From positions 53,754,001 through 53,818,000 of the forward strand of contig OZ296651.1 in NCBI GenBank assembly GCA_965655095.1: 64,000 bases of DNA. The letters are read 5' to 3'. The notes beneath the pieces are model-generated. The model had not been told where the DNA came from, did not search any database, and saw nothing but the letters and a program-made list of their open reading frames with translations. This stretch comes from Haplodiscus bocki. Taxonomy: Eukaryota. How positions within the stretch are numbered: the first letter of the stretch is position 1; the number at the start of each line of letters is the position of its first letter. The position numbers were made by a program, and so were the translations under genes. Shown here one piece after another: positions 9,617-45,958 of this stretch.

Positions 9617-10025
9617 AGACAACTTCAAAGAGGACGACCTTTTGCAGCTCCCAGAACTACTACCTGAAGAATCAATAACCCCTTCTAACCATACCTCCAT
9701 CACTCACGAACTCGAGGATCTCTCCCTTACACCCACTGACGAACCCACCATTGCCCTAAACATTAGACCCAGGAAACGAAAATCAACTACCCCCTCACGA
9801 CAATTGTTTCATAAACAGAAGAAAAGCGAAGAAGCTACTTCCAAATATACTGCTACCCAAAACCCTCAGTTCCAATTTAATCTGACCTACAAAATTAAAG
9901 AAAATATAAATCAGTGGAGAATAGTATTTTGGGACTCCAAACGACAAGAGTTCACCCTAGAAAACCCATCACTAAACTACCAACGATTATCTGTACCCCT
10001 TAGATCGATTTCAGCATTCTGCTAA
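9567..10025 (+). CDS. Accessory ORF, 152 aa, acidic/Pro-rich N-terminus with basic NLS-like RPRKRKS
   Basis: Open ORF whose stop lies immediately before the TRAF-like ORF; no recognised domain. Confidence 0.55.
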   Translation: MSQEGYPFSDLDFLLSKDNFKEDDLLQLPELLPEESITPSNHTSITHELEDLSLTPTDEPTIALNIRPRKRKSTTPSRQLFHKQKKSEEATSKYTATQNPQFQFNLTYKIKENINQWRIVFWDSKRQEFTLENPSLNYQRLSVPLRSISAFC

Positions 10026-10026
10026 C

Positions 10027-10785
10027 ATGTCACAACCTTCACTAAAAGAGAAATTTGAAGACGAACAACTTCTCAGCACCGCCCTTGCTACGGAACTAGA
10101 AGATGTTAAAAAGACCTTAGCCCAACTCAAACTAGACAAAAGTAAGCCTACACACAAAGGACCGTTCAGCTTAAAACCTGATTACTATATCAATTACTCT
10201 ATTAGAAGGATCTTCGAAGAACTGGATAAACTTGAATCTCGACTAGAGAAACTAGAATCAGGAGAACAACCCCATGATTGGAATCTGTATAAAATTATTT
10301 GGAAGTTAGAAAACTTTTCAGTCGTATTCAACAACGCCAAACAATTTGAAGAGATAGAGAACAAAAACATTGCTGATCCAAACCTAGCACGCGGTTTCTG
10401 CAGCACAGCCTTTCTCAGTAAACCTTATGGCTACAGCTTCCTTATCCGCGCCTTCCCTTATGGATGTGGTCCAGCACTTGGCAAATCAATGTCCATCAAC
10501 ATATCTCTCATAGCCGGACCCTTCGATGATATCCTCCCTTGGCCGTTTAAAGGAACTATCCAAATCAGTGTCTTCAGACAAGACAACTCTGGTTTAATCT
10601 GGACCAACCTTCTAAAACCGAGTGATAAAACTACCCCCTGTTTTGTACGACCATCACCTCTACAACCCAACCCGAGTTGTGGTATTTTCTTCTACCTTCC
10701 CCACGAAGAAATGTGCAAGACGCAGAAGAACCTAATCAAGAATGACAACCTCTATATTCAAATAAAGACTCTTGACTTCCTGTGA
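10027..10785 (+). CDS. TRAF-like protein: coiled coil + MATH (TRAF-C) domain, no RING or zinc fingers
   Basis: Heptads (LATELEDVKKTLAQL, FEELDKLESRLEKLE) followed by TRAF MATH motifs IIWKLENFS, STAFLSKPYGYSFLIRAFPYGCG, MSINISLIAGPFDDILPWPFKGTIQISVFRQD, IKNDNLYIQI. ATG at 10027, intact. Confidence 0.9.
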   Translation: MSQPSLKEKFEDEQLLSTALATELEDVKKTLAQLKLDKSKPTHKGPFSLKPDYYINYSIRRIFEELDKLESRLEKLESGEQPHDWNLYKIIWKLENFSVVFNNAKQFEEIENKNIADPNLARGFCSTAFLSKPYGYSFLIRAFPYGCGPALGKSMSINISLIAGPFDDILPWPFKGTIQISVFRQDNSGLIWTNLLKPSDKTTPCFVRPSPLQPNPSCGIFFYLPHEEMCKTQKNLIKNDNLYIQIKTLDFL

Positions 10786-11945: not shown

Positions 11946-14441
11946 CACTAAACCTAATACGTTTTCGTACTTTAATATCTTTCTTAAGGTTAATCGATGA
12001 TCCTCTTAGATGTCGTTGTATTCATTATATTTATAATACTTTTCCGCCTTTTTATCTTGCCTTTATGATTTGTACTCTGATTTATTTTGTTAGTCTTGAT
12101 ATCTTAATACTGTTAACCTTTCTGATATTTTGTCTTCCTGAATTTATAGATAATTGTAAGTCACCAGTTGATACTATTTCTGAAAATAATTTATCTGTTG
12201 ATAATAACAAGGTTTCTTCACAATATTCACCAGATAGAAAAAGTCCTTCCTTTCGAACTCACGCCTGAGACGACCTTTGTTGAAGTGCAGGAAGGCAACT
12301 GTCGCAAAATTGAATTAGGAGACTTATCCTGAGTTTCGGGATAGTTTCTGACTTGGAATAGAGTGGCTTTTGAGACTTTCCACTGCTATTTCATCAACCC
12401 ATCACTACACACACAACAGCACTTCACACCAGCAGTCTGTATAATGAGATACAGCTCAATCTCAGTATGAAAGCTGGCTAAAGTCCTCAACTGGGGGTGA
12501 TTACTGAATCCTTTCTTTAGTTCAGTACTCCGCTAAAGGTGAGTCTAAAAACAACATCTTGAAATACGTGAGAGCAACCGAAGTCATTTGGCCATCTTGA
12601 GTACTTCTTCACATCTTGAGCACGTGTGTAGGGATTTCAACTCGGCCAATTAACGTGCCATTTTTTAATTTCAGAATTTTTGCAAGCCTCTGATTTCGAG
12701 TCAACCTTCAAGAGTAAATTCATGAATTTTCTTTCGCACTCACAAGATAGAAAAAGCTTGACAGAAAAACCCCATGATGCACCCAGATCAACAGAAATTC
12801 CCAAGTAGACTCCTGGAAAGTTCTCTATTCCTGGAAGCTGCCTCTCCTTCAGATATCGGTATTTGCACTGCAGGTCTATTAGGTGACTCTTTCCGCTCCT
12901 ACTCAGCTGTGGAGAAGTTCACCGACAGTGAAAACGACAATTGGGAAAAATGCCTGGGCGCTCTTGCAAAACGATACAAGAGGGTCTGGAGAATGAGAAC
13001 GATCACTCATTCAAAAGATTTTCATCGCTATTGAGCAGCGCGAGTCCACGATAGATGAGGCGCTCAGGCAAAATTTGCGCAAAAAATTCAACCTTTCCAT
13101 CGATATCACTCCGACAGACAGAGCAGCGTGGCTGAGCAAGAAATTTTCCAGTCCCGAGTTCGATAAAACGTGAAGACTCATCTGTGGAACAATACACTGC
13201 TTAGGATGACAAATGTTAACTGTTATCACTTAAAGTGGAGTTACTACAGTGTACGCTTATTATGCTACCTCAGGGAGACGCCGAGGTAAGTGAAATAAAC
13301 GAAAATATATATACTTCTGACGTACAAAGAGTGGTCTCAGCAGTGGTTAGGGGAGAAAAAGTTTTCACTTTAGGAGCAAAAACGGATTTAGACACGTGCA
13401 TCAACGACTTGAGAGATTCGAGTCGAGTTAATGGCAGCAAACGGGCAGGAATGAACTTTGTTCGCGTTAAGAGCTCACTAACCCTGTTGCAAGGATTTTT
13501 TGAGAGTGATCCTCTCGTCAGCCTTCCGCGTGGGCAGATCAACAAACAACATGCGGCAAATGTCAAGAGTCGTAGGACCTGATGTTGCCAGAACTAACTT
13601 TGAAAACTCTCAGGTCCTCCAGGAAAAGATTGGTACGGATCAAGTACTTGTCAGTGCCCTTGGGAAAGCTCGAGTGGTGACTCCTGTGGCTAGTATCAAA
13701 GTCGACTTCTGCGAAGTATCCCTTGTTGACCAACCGTACAGTCACTCTGGGTTGAGGAATATTGAAAATGCAACTTGCTCAGTGAGTGAGTCCACGTCAA
13801 TTACCGATGAGCTCAAACCTCCTGAAGAACCTACAACGTGTAATCCTGTATCTGACAGTTCATTTCAAAAATCCAATTCGCTGTGTCGAAGCTGGTCCAG
13901 GGACCCTACTTGTGCCATGAGAAGTTGGAGGTAAATAAGCGTGAAGATTTTTGCAGAATAAATTTTCGTCCCCTTAAAGTGTGTTTTCATGGGTTTGACG
14001 GGATAATCTGACACTTCACCATGAAAATTTAAAATCTCAAAAATCTATGGTACTGCCAACAGCTTTAAATAAACAGGGTACCTAATGGGAAGAGAAAACC
14101 AATGAGTACTAGTCAAATAGGCCGAGAGAGGCCTGTGTTCATGTCTGTTGTACTTATGGAACTAGAGAGCGTGAAGAGACGGCTCAGGAGCAAGTCAGTG
14201 TACGGGGAATCGACTGAAATTACTTCCCACCTTCCAAAATTCTGACCCAACCAAAGTTTCGAAGTCTGCGTCTTCCTCTACATGAGTTTGTCAGTGACCT
14301 GAGTGACTTTTCGCAGATTTTCAGCGAACTGACACAGCGTGCGGCCGCAACTGATGACTTTATTTGGGGCAAAGAGTGTTATTGTGTTATATTATTCCCT
14401 GCATAAGGATCAATCTGTCGCTCAAGCGTATGAGCCGCTAA

Positions 14442-14732
14442 TGTCGTGGCCATCTTGTGGGCCAGAGTTTTGTGTTGTCTGGTTGCGGAAGATGCTTGCT
14501 TCAGGATGAGGATCATTCTGGGAGTCGTCCTCATTCGTTCCCTGGTTTGTTCCAAATGCATTCTGGGAGGTCACCGGAGCGGTTCCGGAGTGGCTCTGAA
14601 TTAGCGGGTTCATGAGAAAGTGGTAAAGACGTGATAACGCGCCTAATATGCGGTTTTCTGTCCAAATGAACTCTTGCGACAACTTTTTTGTGACTCTTCC
14701 TTCAATTTCCTCAGAAACTTGAGTTATCTAGT
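14442..14732 (-). mobile_element. Older inverted LTR related to element B, 3' part (split by element B insertion)
   Basis: Encodes a diverged copy of the LTR-borne ORF (TENRILGALSRL...GTNEDDSQNDPHPEA); ends GGCCACGACA at 14442. Confidence 0.9.
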
Positions 14733-16480
14733 TGTCGCAGCACACCTGCGAGGCATGCGGCCAACCCCTTCCTTAGAACAAAGACATCCCAACGGTTCAA
14801 TGAAGAACTTAAAACTATAAACATTACTAATTAGACTCATAATTAATCATTTGTTAGACCATTTCTTAATCATTGTGCATATATACGGACACGTATGAAA
14901 TACGTATCCATAACAAATGCACAGAAAATATCAACTGATCCAAACTAGGACGGAACCGTTACGGAGCAAAATAAGTATTCACAGAGCAATTGTTTCCTTA
15001 AAGGTGCTATTTTTATATTAATTTACTTAATTATCTATTTATTTAGATATCAATATAGATCCACCTTTCTGGTACAATTGCAGTAATTAGTAGTAATAAA
15101 TGCAGTGATTGACTTTTAGAAGTGCTTGTAACAAAGCGGCTTACTCGTAACAAATTGACTCTCGGAGTGAATATTTGTTCCGTACGTGTTCCGTCGTCAC
15201 TAGTTTGGTGACGTCATCAATATTATTTCAACTATGCCGTGCTGCAGTGCTATGGTGAATACGGAGTGACTCCGTATTCACTCCTAATTCGATCACGGCC
15301 GACTAAATTAACTCGTACTACTAGTGGCTACGGAGCGCCTCCGGAGGCCACTAGTAGCAGACTGAATTTTAACTTGTACTACTAGTGGCTACGGAGCTGC
15401 TCCGGAGACCACTAGTAGCTACTAGGCGGAACGAGGAGTAAATTGGTAATTATACTAGTTTCTCCTCATCTCCAAAATACTGAAAGCTTAATTAGATGAT
15501 GGTAATATGAACATGAAGGTGATGATTAAATGTATTTTTATGATGAAATCATGCATTTTGTATTTTATTTTATTTTCTTCATTTTTAGTTTTGTAATTTT
15601 ATTTTACTCTCCTAAGCAAGGAAATTCTTTGAACTTTCCATCTATGGAGTATACAATAAACAACTTGTCGGCGCGGGAATAAACACTTTGATGGCCATCT
15701 CTGACGGATTAGGACCGTCAATTTTCTGTCGAAAGATGGAAAAGGCGCGTCCTATGATGAAAGAGATGGATGGAAAAGTTGTTTATTTCCCGCCTGGGTC
15801 GGCATTTTTAACTTTGATGTGCTGTAGTTGAAAGTATTTTTCCCTATTTGTACTTTGACTTGGCGGGTAAACAATTATGTTTCCCGCCAGGAAAAAGTAT
15901 AAATAGGAGAAATGAAAATACAAGAGACAATTTCTTATTTTTATGATACTGATGATAATAACCCAGTACTCTTAAATTTCCTTCATAACTTTGCCTGTTA
16001 CTGTTAGAACCAAGTTGATTTTCTCAATCCTCAACACAAATAATAAAGTATTACTGACTGATAAAAACTTCTCCTTTAAAATGACAACTCGAAATAAGAG
16101 AAAGTTAGCAGCGTTGAACAAAGAAAAGTGTGAAGAGCACCCTAGGAGCAACTTGGCACAAAACTCAAGCGCTCCTAGATCGCAAGAAGAATACATTACT
16201 CAAGTTTCTGAGGAAATTGAGGGAAGGGTTACAAAAAGACTGTCAAAGGAGTTTAGCAGAACGGAAAACCGCATTCTAGGTGCACTGGCGCGACTTGATG
16301 ACTTTCTGATGAACCCATTGCTACCGGGGTACTCCGGAGCCACTCCGGAGCCCACCCGCAGCGTACTGAGAAATAACCAGGGAACGAATGAGGACGACTC
16401 CCAGAATGATCCTCATCCTGAAGCGGGTCTCTTCCACAGCCAGTCGGCACGAAACGCTGGCCCAGGAGACGACCGCGACA
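14733..16480 (+). repeat. 5' LTR of element B (1748 bp)
   Basis: Direct repeat of 26172-27860; has an extra 61-bp tandem unit within 15301-15420. Confidence 0.97.
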
Positions 16481-16497
16481 TGGTGACAGGAAAATAG
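16081..16497 (+). pseudogene. LTR-encoded ORF start (probable Gag N-terminus) cut off by internal deletion; second copy at 27461-27860
   Basis: MTTRNKRKLAAL... begins inside the LTR and reads across the LTR end and PBS; conserved at protein level in the older LTR copies (14442-14732, 36078-36346). Confidence 0.6.
16481..16490 (+). other. Primer-binding site remnant (TGGTGACAGG)
   Basis: TGG immediately after the LTR terminal CA; priming tRNA not identified. Confidence 0.65.
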
Positions 16498-19400
16498 AGT
16501 CACCAACACCACAGAATCACCCTATACAATCAATAAGAACACACAAATTGCCGATTTCTCCGTAGTCACTCCGGAGCAATCCAAGTTTATCAAACCGGTA
16601 GACATGGCAATCCTGAGCATGATTCCTGAAGGTGACCCAGATTTGATCACATATCTGACTGAACTGCTCAGAACAAACAAATCAGATCAGCAATCCAACA
16701 CCTTTTGGTTTCCGACACCCGAAAATCCTGGCAATACAGACGAGCACACCCCAATTCAGAAACGAATCTTAAAAGAATTGTGTGAATTACAACAAAAGGA
16801 AAAACTGAATCCGAAAGATGACAATGAATCAAGAACTGAATTTTTAAAGCGCTTCGATTGGATAGACACACTGCTTAATGAAAGTGAGAAACACGCAGTT
16901 GAAGACATTCTAGTTGAATACCATGACATATTCGCTAGACACAGAATGGACATTGGGATGAACACGGAATTTAAGGTGAGACTCACACCCAAGGATGACA
17001 AAGCTGTTTACAGCCAAAGCTTACCAATGCCGATCCACCTGAAAGAAGATTTGATTGTTGAACTCGCTCTCATGCATAAATACGGGATCATCACAGTGTT
17101 ACCTTTCTCAAAATACGCAAGTCCCATATTTGCACAGAGGAAACCGAATGGAAAATTGCGTCCTCTTGTGGACCTTAGGAAAATCAACACCCTGACTGCA
17201 GATGATTATACTAACAACAATCACCCAGTCAGCACTTTGTCAGATGCAGCACAACACCTGGCAGGAAAATCCCTATTCTGCAAGCTTGATTGCTCCCAAG
17301 CTTACCACTGTTTGCAGATGGCGGACCAACGGTCAGTAGAGATGCTTGCATTCAATTTTTCTAGCAGAACTTTTGCCTACAAAAGACTTGCACAAGGTCT
17401 CAGCAGATCTGTGTCTGCTTTTTCAAGTTTCATGCGCGAGTACTTGGACCCAGTTGTCAAAGCTGACCAATGTGCTCAATACGTGGACGATATTGGAATT
17501 GCAGCCAACAATGCTACGGATCTTAACCGGAACATTCGGGCAGTCTTCTAGTGCATTCGCAACGCAGGATTAAAACTGACAATTGAAAAGTGCCACTTTG
17601 GAGTCAGGCAAGTTGAATTTCTTGGAAGAACCATTTCATCCGAAGGAGTATCACCACAAGCTCACAAAATTCAAAATTTTCTTGCTAAACTTCGATTCCC
17701 CAAATCAAAAAAGGCATTACAGCGCTATCTGGGTTTCGTAAACTATTACAGAAATTATATTCCCAGAATGGCTGAAAAACTGCATCCGTTCCACAAATTG
17801 CTCAAAACGGAAGTGCCAATCAATATTACGTCACAGTTGAAAGAAACATTTGATTCAGTCAATACAGCTCTCAGTAACGCATGTGAATTAGCACTGAAAC
17901 AACCCATTCCAGGAAAGCAACTTGTCTTAATGACAGATGCCAGCTTCAGAAGTGCCGGATATGCCCTTATGATTGAGGACAATCCCGATCAGAAAATACA
18001 GTCAAAGCGGAAGACGTATGCCCCCGTGGCATTCGGCTCAAAAATTTTTTCCCCTGCACAACTGAAGATGTCGATTTATTCAAAAGAATTTTTAGCAATT
18101 TACATGGCATTCCTCGAATTTGCACACATCTTGTGGGAAGCAACGAAACCAACGATCGTTTTGACTGACAACAAATCCGTCACACGATTTTTCCAGACCA
18201 AAGCAATTCCACCATCTTTGTGGAACGCATGTGATTATGTGATCCAGTTCAATTTCAAAACAGCCCATATCGCCGGTTCAATAAACACAGCAGCCGACTT
18301 CCTTTCACGATTAGAGTTAAAAGTCACAGAAAGAATCTGTCTCAAAATCAGGGAAGATGTGCAAACAACACCAATTGAAGTCACAACATCCTCTTCAGAT
18401 GTTGCAGACGAAGAACAGGTTTTCTTCACGCACACAGACGATCAAAATGAAACTGAAGAGCAGATCTTACAAAGGAAAGAACAATCTCGGCAAAAAGCAG
18501 TAGAATGGGTAGCCAACCAGGAACAATCCTCATTGAAGCCAAGTATAAAAGCATTCACAAAGATCGACGGAAATACTACGGCGTATTCCCTTCATGGAAT
18601 TAAATCAAATGCGAGAATACGAGTCGAGCAAGACGCCGATCTAGTATTGAAGAACTTGAAACTTAAAATACTTGGCCAGCCACACGATGACGTCTTATTG
18701 ACAGCAGATAGACGATTTAAACACTACAAAGCCAATGAGGATCGCATTATCCTCAAAGATGGACTTTTACTCCGGAAATACTACGGAGACACTGGTAGTG
18801 TCAAATACTACCAAATTCTTATACCGAAGCAGCTAGTTAACGAAGTGCTCCGGAGCCTCCACGGAGACTTTGGAAAACACCCCGGAATTACTAAAATGAT
18901 AATTGCCTACAGAGAAAAGTATTATTACCCGAAAATGGCTCAAATGATCAGGGAGTGGGTCATGTCTTGTGAGAAATGCATTCGAGAATTACGGATTAAC
19001 CCGCAATTAAACCGCCCCCCTCTGCAAAACCCAAATGAGCACATTACTGCGCCCGAAGACGCCATGCAAATTGACTTAGTACCGGGATTACCACCATCTG
19101 GCGGCTATGAGAATATTGTGACAGCCATGGATGTATTTTCCCGCTATTTATTTGCATACCCGACAGCAACTCAAGATGCCACCACAATTGCTAAAGTGAT
19201 AATTAACATCATGACTAAGCACGCCTACTTACCAACGACGCTCATCTCAGATAAAGGTACAACCTTTACGTCACATGTAATTAAAGAAGTGGCCGGCGTC
19301 CTTGGTATTACTCTAAAGCACGCCACCACCAAGCACGCTCAAACAATTGGGCTACTTGAGCGATCTCACATGTCAATCAAGCAGTCATTAAAGATTGAGA

Positions 19401-20311
19401 CAGGCGAGCGTAGATCATTGTGGCATAAATACATCAGCATTGCGGTCCTTAATTACAACACCTCTTATCATTCAAGCATTGGCTGTGAGCCAAGCAGAGT
19501 GTTTCACGGCCGCATCACCTACAATGTCCTTGATCTAAAAATGGGTATTCGTCCACAGAAAATTTCCCCGCCAGATTCGGAAATTGCACAAGATGTCCTT
19601 GAGCAAACAGAAGCCATTTTCCAGGACGTCAGAAGAAATTCTATGCAAGCTTATATCAAATACAAAGCGTATTATGATAAAAAAGCCAACGCCTCAAAAC
19701 TCAAACAGTCAGATTATGTGTACATTTTACAGCCAAAAGCCGATCATCAGGGAAGTAAAATTCCCTTTACAGACTTTCGGTGGATCGGCCCATATATTAT
19801 TGAGAAAGTATTACCCAACAATAATTATGTGGTACGCAAAATTGGCACCAACAAGACACAAATCCTGCACAGAATGAGGCTGCCTCAATTCACACCCCGT
19901 CAGCCAATACCCGACATATCAGTCACACCACGCGAATGGCAACCAGACCCGGAAGTCACCATTAAACATGATGATTTATACGCCAGAGCATGGGAGTGTG
20001 AATACGACAAGCCAATATTCGACAGCGACCGCGATAATCTGGTATCACCCAATTTACCTGAAATCACAGTCCGATCGGGGGAAGCTGAAGATGAAGTGAG
20101 GAGCACTCCAGGAGTTACACAAAAAGACTCCTCAAATATTCTCCCCCACGCAGATGAAATAGACGACGGAGCAGATACGGATCACTACATGCAGCCTGAT
20201 GCGGACAATAGCGTAGAGCGAATTGACCCTACGCCCACCAACCCCCGCAGCTCAAAATATAATCTACGCCACAACCCAAGGCCAAATTGTAATGACGACT
20301 ACAGATATTAA
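16496..20311 (+). pseudogene. pol: pol remnant (RT, RNase H, integrase); protease absent; one in-frame stop
   Basis: LVDLRKIN, LDCSQAYH, YVDD, MTDAS, SKEFLA, LTDNKS, HGDFGKHPG...CEKC, QIDLV, SDKG, GLLER, WIGPY; TAG at 17549-17551 splits a single frame. Confidence 0.95.
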
Positions 20312-20661
20312 ATCGTCAGTCTGCCTGGGTATGTATCCGGAACAGCTACGGACACAAAATGTGGATTTTGGGAATGTGCTACGGAGCGCATCCGGAGCCA
20401 GTACACGTTCCCCTATAGAACTCCGAATAAGTATGTCTCCGGAGTGCCTCCGGAGACATCCCTGAAATTTCCTGAAATTCCCAAAAACAATGGCGACGGA
20501 TACAATACGGAGTACACACAAGCTATTCCGAATGATTTGAGGATACAACGTGGCAACGTACTCAAAGACTACTCAACTCTGTAAAGTGACAGCGGGCTAT
20601 AGACAGTTAACTACGTACTCTAAATACTAAATATAATTTAAAATTCAAATGATATGTCAAG

Positions 20662-23600
20662 TTATCGGGGACTAGACTGGAAGACTGGTGCAGCACGACG
20701 ACTACGACCACTCCGGCGAGATGCAGCAGTTTTTTCTTGACTCTGGAACGCGCATTCAAAATTAGGGTCTTCGAAATATACCCCCCTCCCCTTTGGCAGA
20801 ACAACCGACTCGTCATCAAACTCAAACAGTCGCTTGGGCCCAACAGCGGGAGCAGGTGTCACACTTCTCTTCCGCTTTCCTTTCCCGGGGCCTCGAGGAG
20901 ACACTGTAGTGCTGCTATAAGGCTGATCCCGAGCAAGTACCGACCCAGACAAGTATTCAACCTGTCCAACTTCAACAACATTGGAGATTCTCACTCCAGC
21001 CCGACCAGATGACTCCCCAACTTCAGAAGACTCGACACTGCGCACTCCGAACCATCTCTCTGATGTATCGCGTGCCTCCTTCCGCCTAACCACCACAACA
21101 TCATATGCCTTCCTGAGATCAACCAAAGTAGCCTCATACCCACCAGGAAGAACATTCGCCCAAGGCTCGCAAGTGGATTGGTCACGCATCGAACCAGCAG
21201 CATTGACGGCAGAAACGAGCAAATTCACCCCATTGTCGCTGAAGAAATCGCGCTGGGTAAACCTAGGCGACCGCACAAAATCCTGAATGCACGCAATTGA
21301 CTTCTCCACAAGCCGGCGACTCAAACCAATTCCAGTCAACTTGACAGTGAATGCGGGAAAGTCCTCAACAGAGTCCCGAAGAAACAAGGTCGTCAATTGG
21401 TACACCTGCAATAAATACTGACAATTAGTGCTTACAATGAAGGCTACCTTGGAGCTGGTGCAACTACTTACTCTGAACAGATGTCTGCGACTCTGGAATC
21501 CAGTCTGTTGAGAGAAGTAGGCCAGGATGTTCCTTACATCAGGATGCTTCCTCGTGGAATGACGTTCCAACTGGCGCTGCTCCCGGACAAACGACTGAAA
21601 CTCAGCTTTGCAAGCCTCAATGTGGGAACCCTTCTCCCAACCACACTCCACAAGCCCATCCAGCAGCTGTCCGAACAAGAAAAAGGCGGAATGGTCATCG
21701 CCTCCAAGAATGATTTCAGGGCAGAAACAGCTGACTCCCTGTCCCAGTTTTGATCTGGCAGCCACGGTTGACAAAATGGTGCTGCAAAATTCGTCCAGGA
21801 AACGACGGGCACTGGTCCGGAACTCCTTCCGCAAGTAGGAGCTCGACATCTTCTCTAAAGCTGCATGGATGCGGGTCCCCACGAGAAAATGCTCATCAGC
21901 AATGGCAGCGAATGAAGAGTGGTTCGGCAGCATGTAATCTTCCCATTTCTCCACCAAGGGAAGCGACTCGCTCGTCTTGATCTTCTGTAGGATGCAATAC
22001 ACAAAGTGGGACAGTTCGCCATACGCCCGATACCCGTACCCACTGCCAGGAGTCTGTTCTGCGCTGAAGTTGTTGTTGTCTGAAACAGAAGAATGCCACT
22101 GAGTACCAGCCTGAAATGAGGAGGCTACTAGGAGCACTCCAAGTTGGATCCTAGAATTCTCTCACCAGCCTGAAATGAGGAGGCCACTAAAAGCACTCCA
22201 AGTTGAGTCCTAGAAATCCCGGACGGACCCAAAACGAGAATCCCGCTGGGAGTCCTACAGATGGACTCCTAGAAAGCCCTACCTCTGCAAAAAGAATATG
22301 AGGATCCCACTGGGAGTCCTACAGGTGGACTCCCAGAAATCCCGAAATATATGAAAATGAGGAGGCCACTAGGAGCACTCCAAGTTGACTCCTAGAATTC
22401 CAACAGTCCAAAATCGCGTGGGAATGGCAGTTACTACACCATGGTGACATGTTGGTGGAAATACTAACACATTTCGAGGATAAGATGGAACAGACGAAAC
22501 TTCATTCTGCCCAATTGGTCGACATAAAAGTATCCATCTATCCCTTTTTTCTAAACAAGGAAATAGAAATGACTATGGGCGCTAGATGGCAAAGAAACGC
22601 AAAAGGAAGAACCATACCAGAAGGCTATCTCCGCTGTCTTTCTTTCCAGTCTCTTTGAGATACGAGACGATCAGCGGCCACACACCAATGATGTTGCTCA
22701 CAACGTCAAGAAGACCGGGAAGAGAAAGATCGCCCGTCTCAATGGCCTGACGAAGGGACTGCCTTGACTGCATCCAGTCTCGATGCTCCGCCCCCTTCAG
22801 CCTCACCACAATGAACTCTGTCATTGAAAAGGGGTCCAATGTCCCGAACACAACTGATGCCGTCTTTTGCAGGCGTCGCTTCAGCAACCTTGCATCGAAA
22901 ACCGGGTAATCTATAAGGGTCTTCGTGTACCCACTGCCGAGGTACTCCTTGTAGCACTCTACTAATGTGTGGGAGCGGCCCGAAAGAGAAACAAGTGATG
23001 CCCCGCTGCCCACAGCGCTCAGGATCTTGCCCAGAATCGCCAACTCACTGCTCGAATCGCCATAATAGCGGTCAATTATGGCTACCGCTACCCGCACAAA
23101 CTCCCCAGCCTTCCACGTCCTAATGAAAACCCAAGTTGCAGAGCCGTGAGTCGCAAACTCCGCACCAAACTGCCGAGATGCCCTGACCCAGTCAACAACA
23201 CGTGTCAAAATCCTCGGCAACATTCCGTTCAGTAAAATTGACTAAAACAGAAACCGAGAAACCCTGAATTAAATGCAATTAGTCCATATGCAATCCGGAG
23301 GCACTACGGAACTAACCAAAACCTCATCGCGGGACCAGGCAACAGTCACATTGATCTGGCTGGCCGTCAACACAAAGCGCTCCCACAGTTTTTCTACTAG
23401 CTCGTAGCTCCCACCCAACTGCAGAGCACCGATCAGGCACGAGACTTTGGCCAACAATGGCAGCTGCGCATCCAAGTTTCCGGAGGCATCCGGAATCAAA
23501 TCCTCTCGAAAAGGATATTCACGATCCCGGACTACTAGTGGCGCAAGCATAATTCTTTCCCGCTGTCTTTCAAGCTCGTCTTCAGGGAGCGGGTTCCCGT

Positions 23601-25161
23601 CAAAATCCAACACCCGCCAACCGGGTGTCTCGAGGCGAAGTCGCTGATCGCGAGAAAAATGGCGGTGTCCCTGAAAATGTCGGATGATTTCGTACTCCCC
23701 GTGAGTACGAACAGAAACATCCTTCCTGCACACCCTGCAATAAAACTCGCTCAGCTTATTTGCAGCATCAGTGGGCCCGGTGACGAAAAACTGAGCCAAC
23801 TCCCCAACAGCGTATCCCTTCTTCATTTTGAAGGTGCGTCTGGAGCGCACCCGCCGACGAGGTTGTTCCATATCAGTGTCCTCTCCACTGGTATCTGTCG
23901 TTTCACTCACACGATGTTGTTGCTGCTGCGGCATGGACGGCCCCTGACTGAGTTTGCCCAACACCTCATCGAGCTCTGCAAACAAAAACCAATCATGAAA
24001 CCACAGAATTACGGAGTCATACGGAACAGTTCCGGAGCACTAACTGGTCATCAACGGACCCAGGAGCTGATTCTTCTCCTCCTCAACTACTGAACGGCAG
24101 AGAGACACCAGCTGATGCCCTGTCGCTCGAATCACTGATGATGAAGGATCTCCAGAGTACTGATCTAAAACAGGAAAATATGAACTGCAAACATGGAGCC
24201 AACGAGGAGTCATACGAGAAGGCTACTTATTTGAAACAAAGGTATACCCTCATCAAACGCCTTCTCCAACAGTTGACGACTCCGATTCTGGCTTGAGTCG
24301 GCCACAGGAAGACAATGCTGGGGCCCCCCAGCGAGCGGTACTAGCTGCCTAGTAACAACTGCCCGTCTCCTGCGCACCACACTCTCGCTCTCCACGCCAG
24401 TGGACACCTCTCCGGCTCCATCTCCTCCTGTCTCTTCTTCAGTGCCTATAATGCAAAAGGCAATCATAAATATACGCTGGCTACACTACCATGATAATTA
24501 AGCGAGAGCAATACTAACTCTCAGCAACAGCCGCCAACGGAGCTCTCCGGGAAGCTCTCCGGGGAAAGTCCTCTCCAGAAGTTGCTCCTCCAACTTCAAA
24601 TTCGCTGCCCGAAGCAGAACACTCTCCACTGCCACGAACGGAATGCTTGGCAGGCTCTCCCGCAGAATCATACACTAAAACACAGCCCGATGGTGAAGTC
24701 AACTTCTCCTGATTCAATGCGCGCATGACAACTAACTTAACGGATCGAACAACTGGCCAGTGTGATATCCCAATAAAAAGTTAATGGATTTCCGAGAAGC
24801 TTGAAAACTAACAAATCGGTAGCCCAGCAGTATCAAGAGCATTGTCCGTCTCTGAAATCAGGCCAGCCCTCCCGACTGCTTCCTCAAACGTGACTCCCTC
24901 CGACTCACAGACAATCGACAGAGGTCCGCCCACAGAGATGATCTCCGACTCATCATCAGCCTCCGTGCCCTCGTCATCCACTCCTCTCCTCGCCTCTTCA
25001 CTCACAACAGCCTCATGCACAATGGGGAGATCAGGGGGGAACTGACCAAAAAGGGACACACTGACATCCGGAGTTGCTCCGGAACTCTCCAACTGACGAC
25101 AACTTTCGTCCCTCACAACCACTCGACTCTTCTTCTTCTTTTGTTGTCTCTCATCAGGCAT
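20662..25161 (-). CDS. Predicted 9-exon antisense gene, 1205 aa, BED-like C2H2 zinc finger, possibly hAT-transposase-derived
   Basis: Exons 25161-24813, 24752-24519, 24445-24248, 24164-24045, 23975-23317, 23241-22618, 22550-22469, 22079-21472, 21405-20662 sum to 3618 nt in one open frame. All introns GT-AG (60, 73, 83, 69, 75, 67, 389, 66 bp), five with GTTAGT donors. Finger FYCRVCRKDVSVRTHGEYEIIRHFQGHRH. Confidence 0.8.
22108..22400. repeat. Five related ~50-60-bp hairpin repeats inside the 389-bp intron
   Basis: gaaatgaggaggccactaggagcactccaagttg..tcctagaa-type x3; ctgggagtcctacaggtggactcccag-type x2 (10-bp perfect stem at 22310-22336). Confidence 0.75.
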
Positions 25162-25538
25162 GATGAACGACGTGGCTTGCTTTCAACTATTACATGGTGG
25201 ATTTATAATTTTATTCATTAATTATCATGATTATTTAATTTGACCGATTTGTCTGCCAGCAATGACGTCAGCAAATATTTCAAGGAGACATTGAGGAGTG
25301 AAACTCAAAATTTTCTCATTGCTAAACCTCATCTTCATTTTGTTTACCAATCATCAACTTCAGTTACACCGCCAATTCAGTGACTCTAACACTTCTACTG
25401 AAACCGCGGGAACTTCAAAGTACTTCCCGCTTAACGGCGCGTGCCGCCTCACGTTTCAGTAAGATCATCACTTTTCAAGTCACTTTGTCAATAAGCAGCA
25501 GCTCTAAAATAATTTAAACTTCATTAAATTTCATTACA

Positions 25539-26215
25539 ATGTATCGCAATCTTTCTTCCAACTCGTCAACAGACTCCGACGTTTTCTACGTAGAGCAATC
25601 TTCGCCAGAAAGGAGCCCCATCAGACACAATACTCCGGCTATCTTGAACTCGACGCAGCTATCGGGAGCAATCGACCCGGAGATGATCACGATTTCCTCC
25701 GTCGCCTCTCCGGAGCCACAAATAGTCACCATTGACTCTGACTCGAATGAGCCGACTCTCCCATATGCCTTCGGAGCCCAATACCCGATAGTGCCGCCAA
25801 GTTTAAACGATCTTAATTTGCCGGCCAATCCCTTTAACATGCTGACATCTATGGCCGTTGTACAGCAGGATCAACAAGACAGCCCCTATCGCCCGAGCCG
25901 TCTGATCCGTCACCAATTTCAACTCCGCCGATGAACATTAGCACAATAAGTGGATTGGAGACGCCGCACACTACAACGGACGAAAATACCTTTCATTCGT
26001 CTGATAACGATCCAAGACGGGTATACTGGGATGCTTCTCTTAATGAAACTTTCGAGTAAGGTGAACCCCGAAGAGTCTACCCCATTCCAAGCCCTCAATC
26101 CACACCGCCGCCTCCTCCGCGAAGAAAGAGAAGACTGAGTATGGGGATGTCTTTTCCCAAAGAGGGGGGAGTGTCGCAGCACACCTGCGAGGCATGCGGC
26201 CAACCTCTTCCTTAG
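25539..26215 (+). pseudogene. Disrupted Ser/Pro/acidic accessory ORF with SIM-like motifs, running across the PPT into the 3' LTR
   Basis: MYRNLSS...VFYVE...MITISS...IVTIDSDS. After a 1-nt frameshift near 25886 it continues SPEPSDPSPISTPP..., has TAA at 26057-26059, then PPPRRKRR...SQHTCEACGQPLP-stop at 26215. Confidence 0.6.
26159..26171 (+). other. Polypurine tract of element B
   Basis: AAAGAGGGGGGAG directly before the 3' LTR TG. Confidence 0.9.
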
Positions 26216-27860
26216 AACAAAGACATCCCAACGGTTCAATGAAGAACTTAAAACTATAAACAATACTAATTAGACTCTTAATTAATCAATTGTTAGACCA
26301 TTTCTTAATCATTGTGCATATATACGGACACGTATGAAATACGTATCCATAACAAATGCACAGAAAATATCAACTGATCCAAACTAGGACGGAACCGTTA
26401 CGGAGCAAAATAAGTATTCACAGAGCAATTGTTTCCTTAAAGGTGCTATTTTTATATTAATTTACTTAATTATCTATTTATTTAGATATCAATATAGATC
26501 CACCTTTCTGGTACAATTGCAGTAATTAGTAGTAATAAATGCAGTGATTGACTTTTAGAAGTGCTTGTAACAAAGCGGCTTACTCGTAACAAATTGACTC
26601 TCGGAGTGAATATTTGTTCCGTACGTGTTCCGTCGTCACTAGTTTGGTGACGTCATCAATATTATTTCAACTATGCCGTGCTGCAGTGCTATGGTGAATA
26701 CGGAGTGACTCCGTATTCACTCCTAATTCGATCACGGCCGACTAAATTAACTCGTACTACTAGTGGCTACGGAGCTGCTCCGGAGACCACTAGTAGCTAC
26801 TAGGCGGAACGAGGAGTAAATTGGTAATTATACTAGTTTCTCCTCATCTCCAAAATACTGAAAGCTTAATTAGATGATGGTAATATGAACATGAAGGTGA
26901 TGATTAAATGTATTTTTATGATGAAATCATGCATTTTGTATTTTATTTTATTTTCTTCATTTTTAGTTTTGTAATTTTATTTTACTCTCCTAAGCAAGGA
27001 AATTCTTTGAACTTTCCATCTATGGAGTATACAATAAACAACTTGTCGGCGCGGGAATAAACACTTTGATGGCCATCTCTGACGGATTAGGACCGTCAAT
27101 TTTCTGTCGAAAGATGGAAAAGGCGCGTCCTATGATGAAAGAGATGGATGGAAAAGTTGTTTATTTCCCGCCTGGGTCGGCATTTTTAACTTTGATGTGC
27201 TGTAGTTGAAAGTATTTTTCCCTATTTGTACTTTGACTTGGCGGGTAAACAATTATGTTTCCCGCCAGGAAAAAGTATAAATAGGAGAAATGAAAATACA
27301 AGAGACAATTTCTTATTTTTATGATACTGATGATAATAACCCAGTACTCTTAAATTTCCTTCATAACTTTGCCTGTTACTGTTAGAACCAAGTTGATTTT
27401 CTCAATCCTCAACACAAATAATAAAGTATTACTGACTGATAAAAAAACTTCTCCTTTAAAATGACAACTCGAAATAAGAGAAAGTTAGCAGCGTTGAACA
27501 AAGAAAAGTGTGAAGAGCACCCTAGGAGCAACTTGGCACAAAACTCAAGCGCTCCTAGATCGCAAGAAGAATACATTACTCAAGTTTCTGAGGAAATTGA
27601 GGGAAGGGTTACAAAAAGACTGTCAAAGGAGTTTAGCAGAACGGAAAACCGCATTCTAGGTGCACTGGCGCGACTTGATGACTTTCTGATGAACCCATTG
27701 CTACCGGGGTACTCCGGAGCCACTCCGGAGCCCACCCGCAGCGTACTGAGAAATAACCAGGGAACGAATGAGGACGACTCCCAGAATGATCCTCATCCTG
27801 AAGCGGGTCTCTTCCACAGCCAGTCGGCACGAAACGCTGGCCCAGAAGACGACCGCGACA
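26172..27860 (+). repeat. 3' LTR of element B (1689 bp)
   Basis: Direct repeat of 14733-16480; length difference explained by a 61-bp unit loss and +2 A. Confidence 0.97.
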
Positions 27861-29245
27861 CTAGTCTTCTTGTGATCTGGGAACATTCGACTTTTGTTCC
27901 AAATTGCTCCTAGGGTGTTCCTCGCAATTTTCCTCGTTTAACGCTGCCAAATTCTTCTTGTTTCTTGGAATTGCCATTTTCTACGGAAAAGTGACCGTCG
28001 GTGATTTTTAATTGATTGTCTTTTACTGAAGAGAAATCAAATTGTTTTTTTACAGTTTTTAATAATGGAATTAACAAAACCGGTTAATATCGTCAATACT
28101 ACCGAAAGATAACACAATTCTAATAAGCTGTACTTTCCTTTCTCCTAATAATACCTTTTCCTTGGCGGGAAACAACTGTTTACACGCCAAGTTAAGGTAC
28201 AAATAGCGAGAATATACTTTACAAATTACTACATCAGAGTCAAAATGCCGACTCTGGCGGGAAACATACAACCTTTCCATCCATCTCTTCCGTCATAAGA
28301 CGCGCCTTTTCTCTTTTCTATCTTTCGACAGAAAATAGACGGACCTAATCCGTCACAGATGGACATCAAAGCGCTCTTTCTCGCGCCGACATATTGTTTA
28401 CAGTGTTGAAACATTGTATAATCCATACATGGAAAATACTAAAATTTCCCTAATTAGGAATATAAAATAAAATAACCAAAATGGAAAAATGCAATTAAAA
28501 AAATACAGAATGCATGACTTTAGTACAAAAATACAATTAATCATCGTCTTTATGCTCATTTCATCATCACTTAATCTTTGCGTCTTCTACTCTTTTAGAA
28601 ATGAGGAGAAATTAGTAGCACTACTAGCTTACTCCTCATTCGTACGAGTAGCGACTGGTGGTTTCCGAATAGTTCTGTATTCACTAGTAGCGGTAGTAGT
28701 CTGTGCTCAAGTGAGGATTGAATCCGGAATCACTTCGTATTCACCAGAACACTGCAGCACGTTATAGTAAGGGTAGTAATGGTGACTTCACCAGACTAGT
28801 AGCCACGGAACACGTACGAACAAATATTCACTCCGAGAGTCAATTCACTTAAAATCAGTTACTGTGCTTATAGCATCAATTTAACCACAAGTTTTAATTA
28901 AACTGCACTTTTTGCAATCATTCAAAGTGTCAGATTTTATTGAAAAAGGTGGATTTATATTTAATAATAAAATATTTATCTTAGGATAAAATTTGCACCT
29001 TTTCGGTTAATAGTGCTCTTTGAATACTTATTTGTTCCGTAACGGTTCCATGCTAGTCCGGATAAGTTTGGTTCCGTATAAAGACGTACCAATATGTAGG
29101 TACATTGTTATGGGGACGTATTAGTTACGTATCCGTATAAATGCACAATAACTAAAAATAGTCTAAGAGTACACAGTTAAGAGTTTGATTAGTAGTGTTA
29201 GTGTTTGCGCTTTTCCTGAGCTCCTGAGCATTACGGTGTCTTTCT
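27861..29245 (-). mobile_element. Older inverted LTR related to element B, 5' part
   Basis: Reverse complement is collinear with the element B LTR (e.g. TCTGTGACGGATTAGGTCCGTC, ACTCTCGGAGTGAATATTTGTTC); continues 14442-14732 across the TSD; outer end eroded. Confidence 0.9.
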
Positions 29246-43547: not shown

Positions 43548-44017
43548 TCAATTGCTAGGATTCATCAGGGTAAGTTCTCCAGGGAACTGAATTTGGAAAT
43601 CTCGAGAGCATACGTAGAACTGGGCAGTGAAACTGTTGTCCTGTTCAGCGAATCCTCCAGACCCGAATACAACGTGATCCTTCCGGTCAGATCCTCTAGG
43701 AAGGCTTCCATACATCGTCTCTCCATTCTCGATCTCAAACTTCATGTCGGAGCTCTGGTACTTGCCGGTAGTTGCGTTGAAACCCATTCCGGAGAAGAGT
43801 TTGAGCCCAGAAGTGCTCACACCATGGTGTTGCAACAGGTTGAAGATGAACCTCAGTTCGCTTTTGCTCTTGGGATAAGTGAGCATGGCATCATGACCCT
43901 CGCATGCAGTCATGTGGTTATCGAATGTCTTGGCTTCCTCGAAAGCCCCGATGATGTAACACCGAAGTTGGGCGAACGAGATGTCGCCGTGCATGTCACC
44001 ACAGTGAACGCGAGGGT
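43548..44017 (-). CDS. Probable terminal exon of a host gene encoding a divergent C-type lectin-like domain
   Basis: Pattern C...RCY...KTFDNHMTACEGHDAMLTYPKSKSELRFI...LFSG...FYVC; GC-richer than flanks; TTTAG acceptor at 44018; AATAAA at 43543-43538 just after the stop; upstream exons not found. Confidence 0.65.
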
Positions 44018-45544: not shown

Positions 45545-45618
45545 TGCTCTATAGCTCAGTCGGTAAGAGCATTGTGCTAAAAACGCGAGGGTCGAGAGTT
45601 CGAAGCTCTGCGTGGACA
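45545..45618 (+). pseudogene. tRNA-Ile(AAT)-derived unit 1
   Basis: TAGCTCAGTCGGTAAGAGCA D-arm, GTGCTAAAAACGC anticodon arm, GTTCGAA T-loop; acceptor stem mismatched. Confidence 0.65.
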
Positions 45619-45816
45619 AAATTTTTTTGTTTGTTTGTTAGCAAGATTTCTCAAAATAGGAGGTAATGTATATGAACGGCTGGGTTACAATCCAGGATAT
45701 CCTGTTGGATCCTGATAACAGTTATCTGGAGATCCTGAATGGATCAGGATTTCAAGCAGATCCAGGATAATAGTAATCTGATAATAGTAATCTGATAAGA
45801 GTAACCAGATAAGTAC

Positions 45817-45890: not shown

Positions 45891-45958
45891 AAATTTTTTG
45901 TTTATCTGATAATAGTAATCTGATAATAGTAATCTGATAATATTAATCAGATAAGTAC

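What the first reader, a model, noticed from the sequence alone, without database searches (positions are those of the whole stretch)
20662..25161. Intact 9-exon, 1205-aa antisense zinc-finger gene carried inside an LTR retrotransposon
Seen: six separate minus-strand ORFs of the track plus two uncalled exons join through eight GT-AG introns into one uninterrupted frame: acidic disordered N-terminus, CxxC-x16-HxxxxxH finger, long helical body, basic NLS-like tail (KGKRKRS). Known: introns persist in a retroelement only when antisense to the genomic RNA, and this finger spacing resembles BED-type fingers at the N-terminus of hAT transposases. Inference: a DNA-transposase-derived, probably catalytically dead DNA-binding protein domesticated by a retrotransposon.
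Basis: partly seen in the sequence, partly recalled or inferred. Interest (0 to 1): 0.9.

Follow-up and report, generated by a model that had tools for sequence, protein, structure and literature searches.

The report
Spliced antisense gene inside coral retrotransposon
A young Ty3/gypsy-type LTR retrotransposon, probably from a stony coral, carries on its opposite strand an intact eight-exon gene for a zinc-finger protein of about 1,180 residues; selection has kept this gene in many diverged lineages of the element, an arrangement known from plants and retroviruses but not in this intron-rich form.

Summary
The gene is real. On the minus strand, 25161-20662, eight exons join through seven GT-AG introns into one open frame of 1181 codons (1162-1188 depending on the exon-2 acceptor). 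It lies between the integrase and the 3' LTR of a 13.1-kb Ty3/gypsy-type element (14733-27860) with 1.7-kb LTRs about 99% identical and a CTAGT target duplication. The window copy lacks gag and protease.

Related copies from two ENA assemblies and two JGI coral metagenomes have the same gene in the same place and orientation. Splice sites sit at identical positions in lineages only 35-60% identical in protein. dN/dS is 0.15 against a 90%-identical copy and about 0.08 against a 75%-identical one, and only the proposed frame shows this.

The finger (CxxC-x16-H-x5-H), the acidic N-terminus and the KGKRKRS tail are present.

The proposed hAT origin is only weakly supported. There is no Pfam or PDB sequence hit. 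A low-confidence AlphaFold model of exon 6 gives the Hermes hAT transposase as top Foldseek hit (E 0.06).

Best reading: a spliced, nuclear, DNA-binding accessory protein of the retrotransposon. It is comparable to plant antisense aORFs and HTLV-1 HBZ.

The parts
14728..14732 (.). Target-site duplication CTAGT, left copy
   Evidence: Identical 5 bases flank both LTR ends
14733..16480 (+). 5' LTR (1748 nt), ends TGTCGC...GCGACA
   Evidence: blastn self-comparison: 99.6% over 1114 nt and 98.9% over 626 nt against the 3' LTR. Termini read
16481..16498 (+). Putative primer-binding site starting TGGTGACAGG, directly after the 5' LTR
   Evidence: Read from the sequence. The matching tRNA was not identified
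16604..17551 (+). pol fragment: reverse transcriptase ORF (315 aa). gag and protease are missing from this copy
   Evidence: Pfam RVT_1, E 4e-16. The window aligns to L002 only from 16496 on, so about 2.3 kb of gag/PR present in L002 is absent here
17768..20311 (+). pol: RNase H and integrase ORF (847 aa)
   Evidence: Pfam RT_RNaseH, RT_RNaseH_2, Integrase_H2C2, rve, and weakly (below Pfam's cut-off) Integrase_p58_C
24813..25161 (-). Antisense gene exon 1 (ATG at 25161; acidic; donor GTTAGT)
   Evidence: dN/dS 0.21 against L002. The end of the exon and its donor are conserved in L001
24519..24731 (-). Exon 2 (acceptor ambiguous: 24752, 24731 or 24674)
   Evidence: Frame enumeration. dN/dS 0.08
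24248..24445 (-). Exon 3
24045..24164 (-). Exon 4
   Evidence: The acceptor and donor positions are conserved in L001, L003, L005, L007, L012 and L013
23317..23975 (-). Exon 5: basic stretch, zinc finger and conserved region downstream
   Evidence: 747 clusters at 50% identity match it. Alignment A1
23659..23739 (-). Zinc finger CxxC-x16-H-x5-H (residues 373-399)
   Evidence: Ligand columns are kept in 34, 34, 29 and 25 of 42 family members, decayed copies included
22618..23241 (-). Exon 6: beta1-beta2-beta3-alpha1 followed by helices; possible RNase H-like (hAT-like) domain
   Evidence: 965 database relatives. AlphaFold pLDDT 58.9. Top Foldseek hits are Hermes transposase, E 0.06
22111..22617 (-). 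Intron 6 (507 nt), the only long intron. It holds imperfect direct repeats and a 27-nt inverted repeat, and its length varies between copies
21472..22110 (-). Exon 7
21406..21471 (-). Intron 7 (66 nt, GTAAGT...TTGCAG), in frame and stop-free in this copy
   Evidence: It is 73 nt long in L007, so it has to be spliced there to keep the frame. This stretch is not conserved in alignment A3
20662..21405 (-). Exon 8 with the stop codon (20662-20664)
20863..20883 (-). Basic NLS-like KGKRKRS
   Evidence: The K columns are invariant or nearly so in A3
25202..25207 (-). TATAAA about 46 nt upstream of the ATG: candidate promoter of the antisense gene's own
   Evidence: Pattern found. The stretch between it and the ATG (from 25200) is nearly identical in L002 and L006. 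Function not shown
26159..26171 (+). Polypurine tract AAAGAGGGGGGAG, directly before the 3' LTR
26172..27860 (+). 3' LTR
27861..27865 (.). Target-site duplication CTAGT, right copy

Best explanation
The stretch 20662-25161 (minus strand) is a functional accessory gene of a Ty3/gypsy-type LTR retrotransposon.

Shown:
- Eight exons with seven GT-AG introns encode a protein of about 131 kDa.
- Its parts, in order, are an acidic N-terminal region, a basic stretch followed by a CxxC...H...H zinc finger, a mixed alpha/beta domain (exon 6), a long predicted-helical C-terminal half, and a basic KGKRKRS tail.
- The gene has been inherited together with pol through a long diversification of the element family.
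- It is under strong purifying selection.

Inferred:
- It is transcribed from its own promoter in the 1-kb spacer between the ATG and the 3' LTR, running against gag-pol.
- Its introns are removed from this antisense mRNA. They are never spliced from the sense genomic RNA, where they read as reverse complements. That is why they survive reverse transcription.
- The protein enters the nucleus and binds DNA through the finger. It acts in trans for the element, most likely on LTR transcription or silencing, or on the choice of integration sites.
- The exon 5-8 body may descend from a hAT-type DNA transposase that no longer has a recognisable DDE triad.
For: - One open spliced frame of 1181 codons with canonical splice sites.
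- dN/dS is 0.15 against L002 over 1179 codons, with every exon between 0.05 and 0.21.
- dN/dS is about 0.08 against L007, with dS saturated.
- The proposed frame has the lowest ratio of the six; the only other low one is the opposite-strand frame that shares its third codon positions.
- Donor and acceptor positions of introns 3-7 are the same in lineages at 35-60% protein identity.
- Intron 7 is 73 nt in L007, so splicing is obligatory there.
- All exons present on the contig are stop-free in L007, L009, L012 and L013, which come from other samples.
- The location is always the same: antisense, just 3' of the integrase.
- Its divergence tracks that of pol.
- No inverted repeats bracket the gene.
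- The element itself is a bona fide recent insertion: TG...CA LTRs about 99% identical, a 5-bp target duplication and a polypurine tract.
- The finger, the basic tail and the acidic N-terminus are present, and the finger ligands are conserved.
- For the hAT idea: the top Foldseek hits of the exon-6 model are Hermes transposase chains, aligned over the whole query.
- Analogy with plant antisense aORFs, which are predicted to bind DNA or are nuclear (PMC7264820, PMC11963269).
Against: - There are no expression data: neither the junctions, the promoter nor the poly(A) site has been observed. No AATAAA or ATTAAA follows the stop within 350 nt.
- Nothing was tested about function. DNA binding and nuclear import are inferred from a finger pattern and a basic motif.
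- No Pfam or PDB sequence similarity exists for any part.
- The AlphaFold models are poor (pLDDT 58.9 and 36.4).
- The Hermes hits are not statistically significant (E 0.06, TM below 0.3), and the C-terminal model gave only noise.
- The window copy has lost gag and protease, so in this copy the gene cannot serve an autonomous element.
- Copy L002 has a premature stop at codon 9 of exon 1.
Confidence: 0.6

Rival explanations
1. The gene is a nested, independent mobile element or a one-off transduced host gene that happens to sit in this copy. It has no role for the retrotransposon.
For: Retroelements do pick up host sequences (PMC7264820). The window copy is itself defective, lacking gag and protease.
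Against: The same gene sits at the same position and in the same orientation in all nine element copies that reach pol, from four data sets. pol has diverged to 54-90% identity among them, and the gene's own divergence tracks that. No terminal inverted repeats bracket it. Hundreds of copies exist. An unrelated gypsy-type pol in the same window lacks it.
Confidence: 0.04
2. The gene is real and belongs to the element, but the protein is not hAT-derived. It has another or an untraceable origin, such as a captured host zinc-finger protein or de novo evolution. The Hermes hits are noise from a poor model.
For: No Pfam hit to zf-BED, Dimer_Tnp_hAT or DUF4371 in any exon piece or in any member of the exon-5 and exon-7/8 alignments. 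No PDB sequence or profile hit. Foldseek gives only E 0.06 and TM 0.26-0.30 on a model with pLDDT 58.9. The weak finger hits go to C2H2-type families, not to BED.
Against: Hermes is the only protein that recurs at the top of the Foldseek list, and it aligns over the full 205-212 columns of the query. The predicted order beta1-beta2-beta3-alpha1, followed by a long helical region, fits an RNase H-like transposase core with an insertion domain. The order of parts, finger then that core then helices, is the hAT order (from my knowledge of the family; not tested).
Confidence: 0.5
3. The product restrains the element rather than promoting it. It would act as a self-limiting repressor, or the antisense transcript itself would be the active agent by pairing with genomic RNA and feeding small-RNA silencing, with the protein secondary.
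For: Both ideas have been raised for plant antisense aORFs and for retroviral antisense genes (PMC7264820). The antisense mRNA overlaps about 4.5 kb of the genomic RNA.
Against: An RNA-only role does not explain dN/dS of 0.08-0.15 in one frame over about 1180 codons, or the conserved splice sites. A repressor role is compatible with all the sequence evidence and cannot be excluded.
Confidence: 0.2
4. The joined frame is an artefact of choosing GT and AG dinucleotides among chance ORFs.
For: Many GT/AG combinations keep the frame open between exons 1 and 2. This is why that one acceptor is ambiguous.
Against: Frame-specific purifying selection. Splice positions conserved at saturated synonymous divergence. 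Indels that are not multiples of three fall in introns, for example 7 nt in intron 1 of L006 and the 73-nt intron 7 of L007.
Confidence: 0.01

Closest known systems
Antisense additional ORFs (aORF-3R) of plant Ty3/gypsy elements: maize Grande gene23, rice RIRE2, and Silene and other Retand elements with the TRP28 domain (PMC7264820; PMC11963269)
   Same: A long pol-to-3'LTR region (5.9 kb here, 2.9-6.6 kb in Retand). The gene lies antisense to gag-pol and is present in most copies and in diverged lineages. It has its own promoter (shown for Grande) and a nuclear or DNA-binding product (shown or predicted there, inferred here). The function is unknown but thought to be regulatory.
   Different: No sequence relation: no PF04195 or any other Pfam hit. 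The host is probably an animal (a coral), not a plant. The gene has seven conserved spliceosomal introns and encodes about 1180 aa. The two reviews I read describe single ORFs and mention no introns.
HTLV-1 HBZ (and HTLV-2 APH-2), antisense genes of deltaretroviruses
   Same: Encoded on the minus strand at the 3' end of the provirus. The transcript is spliced, the protein is nuclear, and it modulates transcription from the LTR. This is the best functional analogy. It rests on my own knowledge and on the summaries in PMC7264820 and PMC11963269.
   Different: HBZ is a small bZIP protein with one intron, and its promoter lies in the 3' LTR. Here the protein is six times larger, has a zinc finger and no bZIP, and the gene starts about 1 kb inside the 3' LTR boundary. 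No homology.
hAT superfamily transposases (Hermes, Ac) and their domesticated descendants (ZBED proteins, DAYSLEEPER)
   Same: The order of parts: an N-terminal CxxC...H...H finger, then a beta1-beta2-beta3-alpha1 domain, then a long helical region. The top Foldseek hits of the exon-6 model are Hermes chains. Domesticated hATs are DNA-binding regulators, which is the role proposed here.
   Different: No significant sequence or profile match. No terminal inverted repeats. No identifiable DDE triad. The gene is part of a retrotransposon, not a DNA transposon or a host gene.
Additional ORFs of bdelloid rotifer LTR retrotransposons (PMC5408684)
   Same: Animal LTR retrotransposons that carry conserved extra genes besides gag and pol.
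   Different: I read only the title and the start of the abstract. I did not check the orientation of those ORFs, whether they have introns, or any sequence relation.

Membership tests
Ty3/gypsy-type LTR retrotransposon (carrier element) | Two long direct terminal repeats ending TG...CA, flanked by a short target-site duplication | tested here: met
   LTRs 14733-16480 and 26172-27860, 98.9-99.6% identical, with ends TGTCGC...GCGACA and the duplication CTAGT
Ty3/gypsy-type LTR retrotransposon (carrier element) | gag, then pol in the order protease, RT, RNase H, integrase | tested here: met
   The full copy L002 has DUF1759/Retrotrans_gag, gag-asp_proteas, RVT_1, RT_RNaseH(_2), Integrase_H2C2 and rve in that order. 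The window copy keeps only RT, RNase H and integrase. No RT phylogeny was made, so the clade within Ty3/gypsy is open
Ty3/gypsy-type LTR retrotransposon (carrier element) | Primer-binding site after the 5' LTR and polypurine tract before the 3' LTR | tested here: inconclusive
   A TGG-initiated stretch at 16481 and a purine run at 26159-26171 are present. The primer tRNA was not identified
hAT superfamily transposase or hAT-derived protein | N-terminal BED-type zinc finger | tested here: inconclusive
   The CxxC-x16-H-x5-H pattern is present and conserved. Pfam zf-BED is not hit. Only weak C2H2-type hits appear (ZN292-like in 5 of 42 members, best E 0.043)
hAT superfamily transposase or hAT-derived protein | RNase H-like catalytic core with a DDE triad interrupted by an all-helical insertion domain | tested here: inconclusive
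   The AlphaFold model of exon 6 shows beta1-beta2-beta3-alpha1 followed by helices, at pLDDT 58.9. Foldseek ranks 1-4 are Hermes chains, at E 0.06-0.16 and TM 0.26-0.30. No DDE triad could be assigned. The model of exons 7-8 was unusable (pLDDT 36.4)
hAT superfamily transposase or hAT-derived protein | C-terminal hAT dimerisation domain (Pfam PF05699) | tested here: not met
   No hit in the window protein or in any of the 31 members of A3, even at E up to 10. A short conserved exon-8 motif looks similar by eye only
hAT superfamily transposase or hAT-derived protein | Terminal inverted repeats around the gene (with an 8-bp target duplication) | tested here: not met
   No inverted repeats bracket 20312-26171. 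The only pairs are a 27-nt one inside intron 6 and a 17-nt one (20438-20454 / 23294-23310) that does not bracket the gene. This would be expected for a domesticated gene
Plant Retand-type antisense aORF (TRP28) | Transposase_28 domain (PF04195) | tested here: not met
   No Pfam family is hit by any exon piece or by the members of the exon-5 and exon-7/8 alignments
Plant Retand-type antisense aORF (TRP28) | [quoted passage not shown] | tested here: met
   A 5.9-kb region (20312-26171). The arrangement is conserved in all copies examined that reach pol
Retroviral antisense bZIP proteins (HBZ type) | Basic leucine-zipper domain | tested here: not met
   No bZIP family among the Pfam results

The most novel reading that the evidence does not exclude
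A clade of animal Ty3/gypsy retrotransposons has permanently recruited a DNA-transposase-derived (hAT-like), intron-rich gene. It uses the product as a sequence-specific DNA-binding accessory factor, for instance to steer integration or to switch on its own LTR. This would be a stable class I / class II hybrid in which the introns are protected by the antisense orientation.
Probability: 0.35. Interest if true: 0.85.

Novelty: new variant of a known kind. Interest (0 to 1): 0.72.

Why it matters
Antisense accessory genes of LTR retroelements are known from a few plant families and from deltaretroviruses. Their functions are mostly unknown, and the text searches I ran turned up no animal example.

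Here the gene is large, has seven conserved introns and is under clear purifying selection. It occurs in hundreds of copies, some of them very young. That makes the family a tractable system for asking what such genes do for a retrotransposon.

It is also a textbook case of introns being carried through reverse transcription because they lie on the non-template sense.

If the hAT link holds, it would show a retrotransposon domesticating a DNA-transposase fold, the reverse of the usual host-domestication story.

Practically, gene finders that mask TEs will miss this protein family. No NCBI or UniProt relative turned up. All database relatives are unnamed ORF fragments from ENA assemblies, one of them also in Metaclust.

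Tried and rejected
- **Pfam on the window pieces:** nothing on any of the six exon pieces at E up to 0.1.
- **Pfam on family members:** nothing relevant on all 42 members of the exon-5 alignment or all 31 members of the exon-7/8 alignment at E up to 10.
- **PDB sequence and profile searches:** only noise with exon 5 and with alignments A1-A4.
- **AlphaFold of exons 7-8 with a 31-sequence alignment:** failed (pLDDT 36.4). Its Foldseek search gave only noise.
- **Comparing A2 directly with a PDB chain id:** the tool does not accept such ids.
- **Using the last homology search on pol to learn the organism or a named clade:** the list was saturated by unnamed ENA copies of the same family.
- **Cluster look-up of ten longer exon-5 hits:** all were unnamed ENA singletons.
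- **Tandem Repeats Finder on intron 6:** found nothing, although blastn shows imperfect direct repeats there.
- **Nine-exon model:** I could not find a ninth exon. Intron 6 is poorly conserved and rich in indels between copies, so it is unlikely to hide one.
- **Exon-2 acceptor:** it could not be settled, because the three close copies are nearly identical there.
- **Literature searches for an animal precedent or for a hAT-like gene in an LTR element:** nothing specific.
- **Sequences not built:** The consensus lines that the alignment tool prints were not used as sequences.
- **Human sequence:** nothing in the window or the loci looked human.


Full report
**Setting**

The window has no N runs. 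Nothing in it looks human. It contains gypsy-type retroelements, a TRAF/MATH-domain ORF and a C-type-lectin-like ORF.

blastn of the window against itself shows two direct repeats, 14733-16480 and 26172-27860. They are 98.9-99.6% identical. They end TGTCGC...GCGACA and are flanked by the 5-bp duplication CTAGT. A TGG-initiated stretch follows the 5' repeat, and a purine run (26159-26171) precedes the 3' repeat. This is a recently inserted LTR retrotransposon of 13.1 kb on the + strand.

Its plus-strand ORFs are a reverse transcriptase (16604-17551) and an RNase H plus integrase (17768-20311). A full-length relative, L002, is 15.6 kb with LTRs 99.7% identical. It has DUF1759/Retrotrans_gag, an aspartic protease, RT, RNase H, and H2C2 plus rve integrase in that order, which is a Ty3/gypsy-type layout. 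Compared with L002, the window copy lacks about 2.3 kb covering gag and part of the protease.

**The observation**

Between the end of pol (20311) and the 3' LTR lie 5.9 kb. On the minus strand, the ORFs listed can be joined as follows:

| Exon | Window coordinates |
|---|---|
| E1 | 25161-24813 |
| E2 | 24731-24519 |
| E3 | 24445-24248 |
| E4 | 24164-24045 |
| E5 | 23975-23317 |
| E6 | 23241-22618 |
| E7 | 22110-21472 |
| E8 | 21405-20662 |

- All seven introns are GT-AG. Four of the seven donors are GTTAGT.
- Six introns are 66-83 nt long, and intron 6 is 507 nt.
- The result is one open frame of 1181 codons.
- The E2 acceptor could also be 24752 or 24674, giving 1188 or 1162 aa. The three close copies are too similar there to decide.
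- I could not reproduce nine exons or 1205 aa.
- Intron 7 is in frame and stop-free in this copy. Retaining it would add 22 aa, which may explain part of the difference.
- The finger CRVC-x16-H-x5-H (residues 373-399), the acidic exon 1 (22% D+E) and KGKRKRS (residues 1109-1115) are all present.

**Is it more than chance?**

Homology searches find a very large family.
- 93 relatives of the E7-E8 ORF fall into groups at 85-99% and about 45% identity.
- Exon 5 matches 747 clusters at 50% identity.
- Exon 6 has 965 relatives.
- All are unnamed ORF fragments from ENA assemblies, one of them also in Metaclust.

I fetched seven loci by exact protein look-up and read four of the nine loci that a pattern scan of JGI metagenomes returned.

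*Close copy L002* is about 90% identical in DNA.
- All seven splice-site pairs are intact there, and the spliced CDS has the same length.
- L002 has one premature stop, at codon 9 of exon 1.
- dN/dS between the window and L002 is 0.15 over 1179 codons, and every exon lies between 0.05 and 0.21.
- As a control I computed the same ratio in all six frames of E5-E8. Only the proposed frame is low (0.12-0.21), together with the opposite-strand frame that shares its third codon positions (0.20-0.34). The other four frames give 0.7-3.9.

*Copy L006* is decayed. It has a frameshift in E3 and two mutated splice sites.

*Copy L007* comes from a second ENA assembly and is about 75% identical in protein.
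- Every exon on the contig (the end of E3 through E8) is stop-free.
- dN is 0.19 with saturated dS, so omega is about 0.08.
- Its intron 7 is 73 nt, not a multiple of three, so it must be spliced.

*More distant lineages* are L001, L003, L004, L005, L012 and L013, at 35-63% identity per exon.
- The extrapolated exon ends fall on GT donors and AG acceptors at the same codon positions for introns 3 to 7.
- In L012 and L013, every exon detected is free of stops.
- Many exon-5 ORF fragments in the database read through the same donor as ...VL|VS.

The gene and its introns are therefore real and old.

**Relation to the element**

- In every locus that reaches pol (L001-L007, L013), the gene lies antisense and immediately 3' of the integrase.
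- Protein identity to the window copy falls together for pol and for the antisense gene:

| Locus | pol identity | Antisense gene identity |
|---|---|---|
| L002 | 88% | 92% |
| L006 | 85% | 90% |
| L005 | 79% | 53% |
| L001 | 76% | 55% |
| L004 | 62% | 40% |
| L003 | 54% | 47% |

- L007 is an exception (90% against 75%). There only 241 residues of pol are on the contig.
- No inverted repeats bracket the gene.
- A second, unrelated gypsy-type pol in the window (101-4476, 25% identity) has no such gene.
- The gene is thus a long-standing component of this retrotransposon clade, not a nested element or a one-off capture.

**Host**

- The JGI contigs carry the prefixes Ga0126342 and Ga0126343. 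A preprint names the latter as the metagenome of the coral Cyphastrea sp. 2 (10.1101/391565).
- Together with the lectin and TRAF/MATH ORFs and about 40% GC, the host is probably a stony coral. This is an inference, not a demonstration.

**What is the protein?**

- No Pfam family is hit by any exon piece or by any member of the exon-5 and exon-7/8 alignments. The finger gives only weak C2H2-type hits.
- PDB sequence and profile searches give nothing.
- AlphaFold on exon 6 with 30 sequences gave a low-confidence model (pLDDT 58.9). It has a helix, three antiparallel strands and a helix, then a poorly predicted stretch, then six helices.
- Foldseek of that model against the PDB put Hermes hAT transposase chains at ranks 1-4, with more further down. 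They align over 202-212 columns, the whole query. However, E is 0.06-0.4 and TM is 0.26-0.30.
- That counts as one weak independent hit, not proof.
- The model of exons 7-8 failed (pLDDT 36.4), and its Foldseek list is noise.
- By eye I see further resemblances to hAT signatures in the right order. One is a conserved R-C-x-x-K-T stretch after the strand region of exon 6. The other is the most conserved exon-8 stretch, which recalls the hAT C-terminal S-E-R-x-F-S motif with Q in place of E (alignments A3 and A4). These are recollections and count only as leads.
- No DDE triad can be assigned, so 'catalytically dead' remains untested.
- I put the hAT origin at roughly even odds.

**How it most likely works**

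Shown:
- a selected, spliced coding frame;
- its fixed antisense position;
- co-inheritance with pol;
- a conserved zinc finger and basic motifs.

Inferred:
- Transcription starts from an internal promoter in the 1-kb spacer upstream of the ATG. A TATAAA lies 46 nt upstream, in a stretch well conserved between copies.
- The introns are spliced from the antisense mRNA only. They are invisible to the spliceosome in the sense genomic RNA and so pass through reverse transcription.
- The protein is imported into the nucleus and binds DNA. It then acts in trans on the element's transcription, its silencing or its integration.

The nearest analogies are the antisense aORFs of plant Grande, RIRE2 and Retand elements, whose products are nuclear or predicted to bind DNA (PMC7264820, PMC11963269), and HTLV-1 HBZ. 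A restraining role cannot be excluded. An RNA-only role is at odds with the frame-specific selection.

**Novelty**

- The architecture, an antisense accessory gene between pol and the 3' LTR, is known.
- New here are the probable animal host, the size of the protein, the seven conserved introns, the lack of any relation to the plant or retroviral examples, and the possible transposase ancestry.
- Four literature searches found no animal precedent. The library covers open-access papers only, so this is not proof of absence.

**Limits**

- There are no expression data.
- The organism is inferred.
- Most database relatives are decayed fragments.

Noticed in passing
window 16481-16604, compared with L002:15634-17928: The window copy lacks about 2.3 kb (gag and part of the protease) that the full 15.6-kb relative L002 has. 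Yet its LTRs are about 99% identical and its antisense gene is fully open. It is either a non-autonomous derivative mobilised in trans, or the deletion happened after insertion.
   Followed up: partly
window 14438-14730 and 27862-28845: Both flanks of the element resemble this family's LTR in inverted orientation (72-77% identity). The element seems to have inserted into an older, related LTR.
   Followed up: no
window 101-4476 (+): A second Ty3/gypsy-type pol (RT, RNase H, integrase in three ORFs), cut by the window start. It is only about 25% identical to the first and has no homologue of the antisense gene downstream.
   Followed up: partly
window 8903-10785 (+) and 43548-44033 (-): ORFs with a TRAF/meprin MATH domain (E 1e-17) and a weak C-type lectin hit. 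They are probably host genes or fragments and fit an invertebrate such as a coral.
   Followed up: no
window 45297-46326: Tandem repeats of 142 nt and a pair of 199-nt repeats. One unit scores as a tRNA (Rfam 35 bits; ARAGORN calls Phe, anticodon AAA) at 45959-46032. This may be a tRNA-derived SINE or satellite.
   Followed up: no
window 22111-22617 (intron 6): This is the only long intron. It holds imperfect direct repeats that each carry an acceptor-like 'cctcatttcag', and a 27-nt inverted repeat (22246-22336). Its length differs between copies (507 nt here, about 445 in L002, about 386 in L007). It may offer alternative acceptors.
   Followed up: partly
window 21406-21471 (intron 7); L001, L002, L005, L007: Intron 7 is in frame and stop-free in the window, L002, L001 and L005 (66-69 nt), which is why ORF callers report one 463-491-aa ORF. 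It is 73 nt in L007. A retained-intron isoform is conceivable in some lineages.
   Followed up: partly
L007 (ENA ERZ27245416), whole contig: The integrase C-terminus is 90% identical to the window's, but the adjacent antisense gene only 75%. This could reflect different evolutionary rates or recombination between lineages.
   Followed up: no
window 15991-16497 and 27461-27913 (+): Each LTR holds an ORF of 150-168 aa with no family match. It is probably not a gene.
   Followed up: no
window 25539-25934 (+): A 131-aa sense-strand ORF lies in the spacer between the antisense ATG and the 3' LTR. No gene is called at the matching place in L002, so it is probably spurious.
   Followed up: partly
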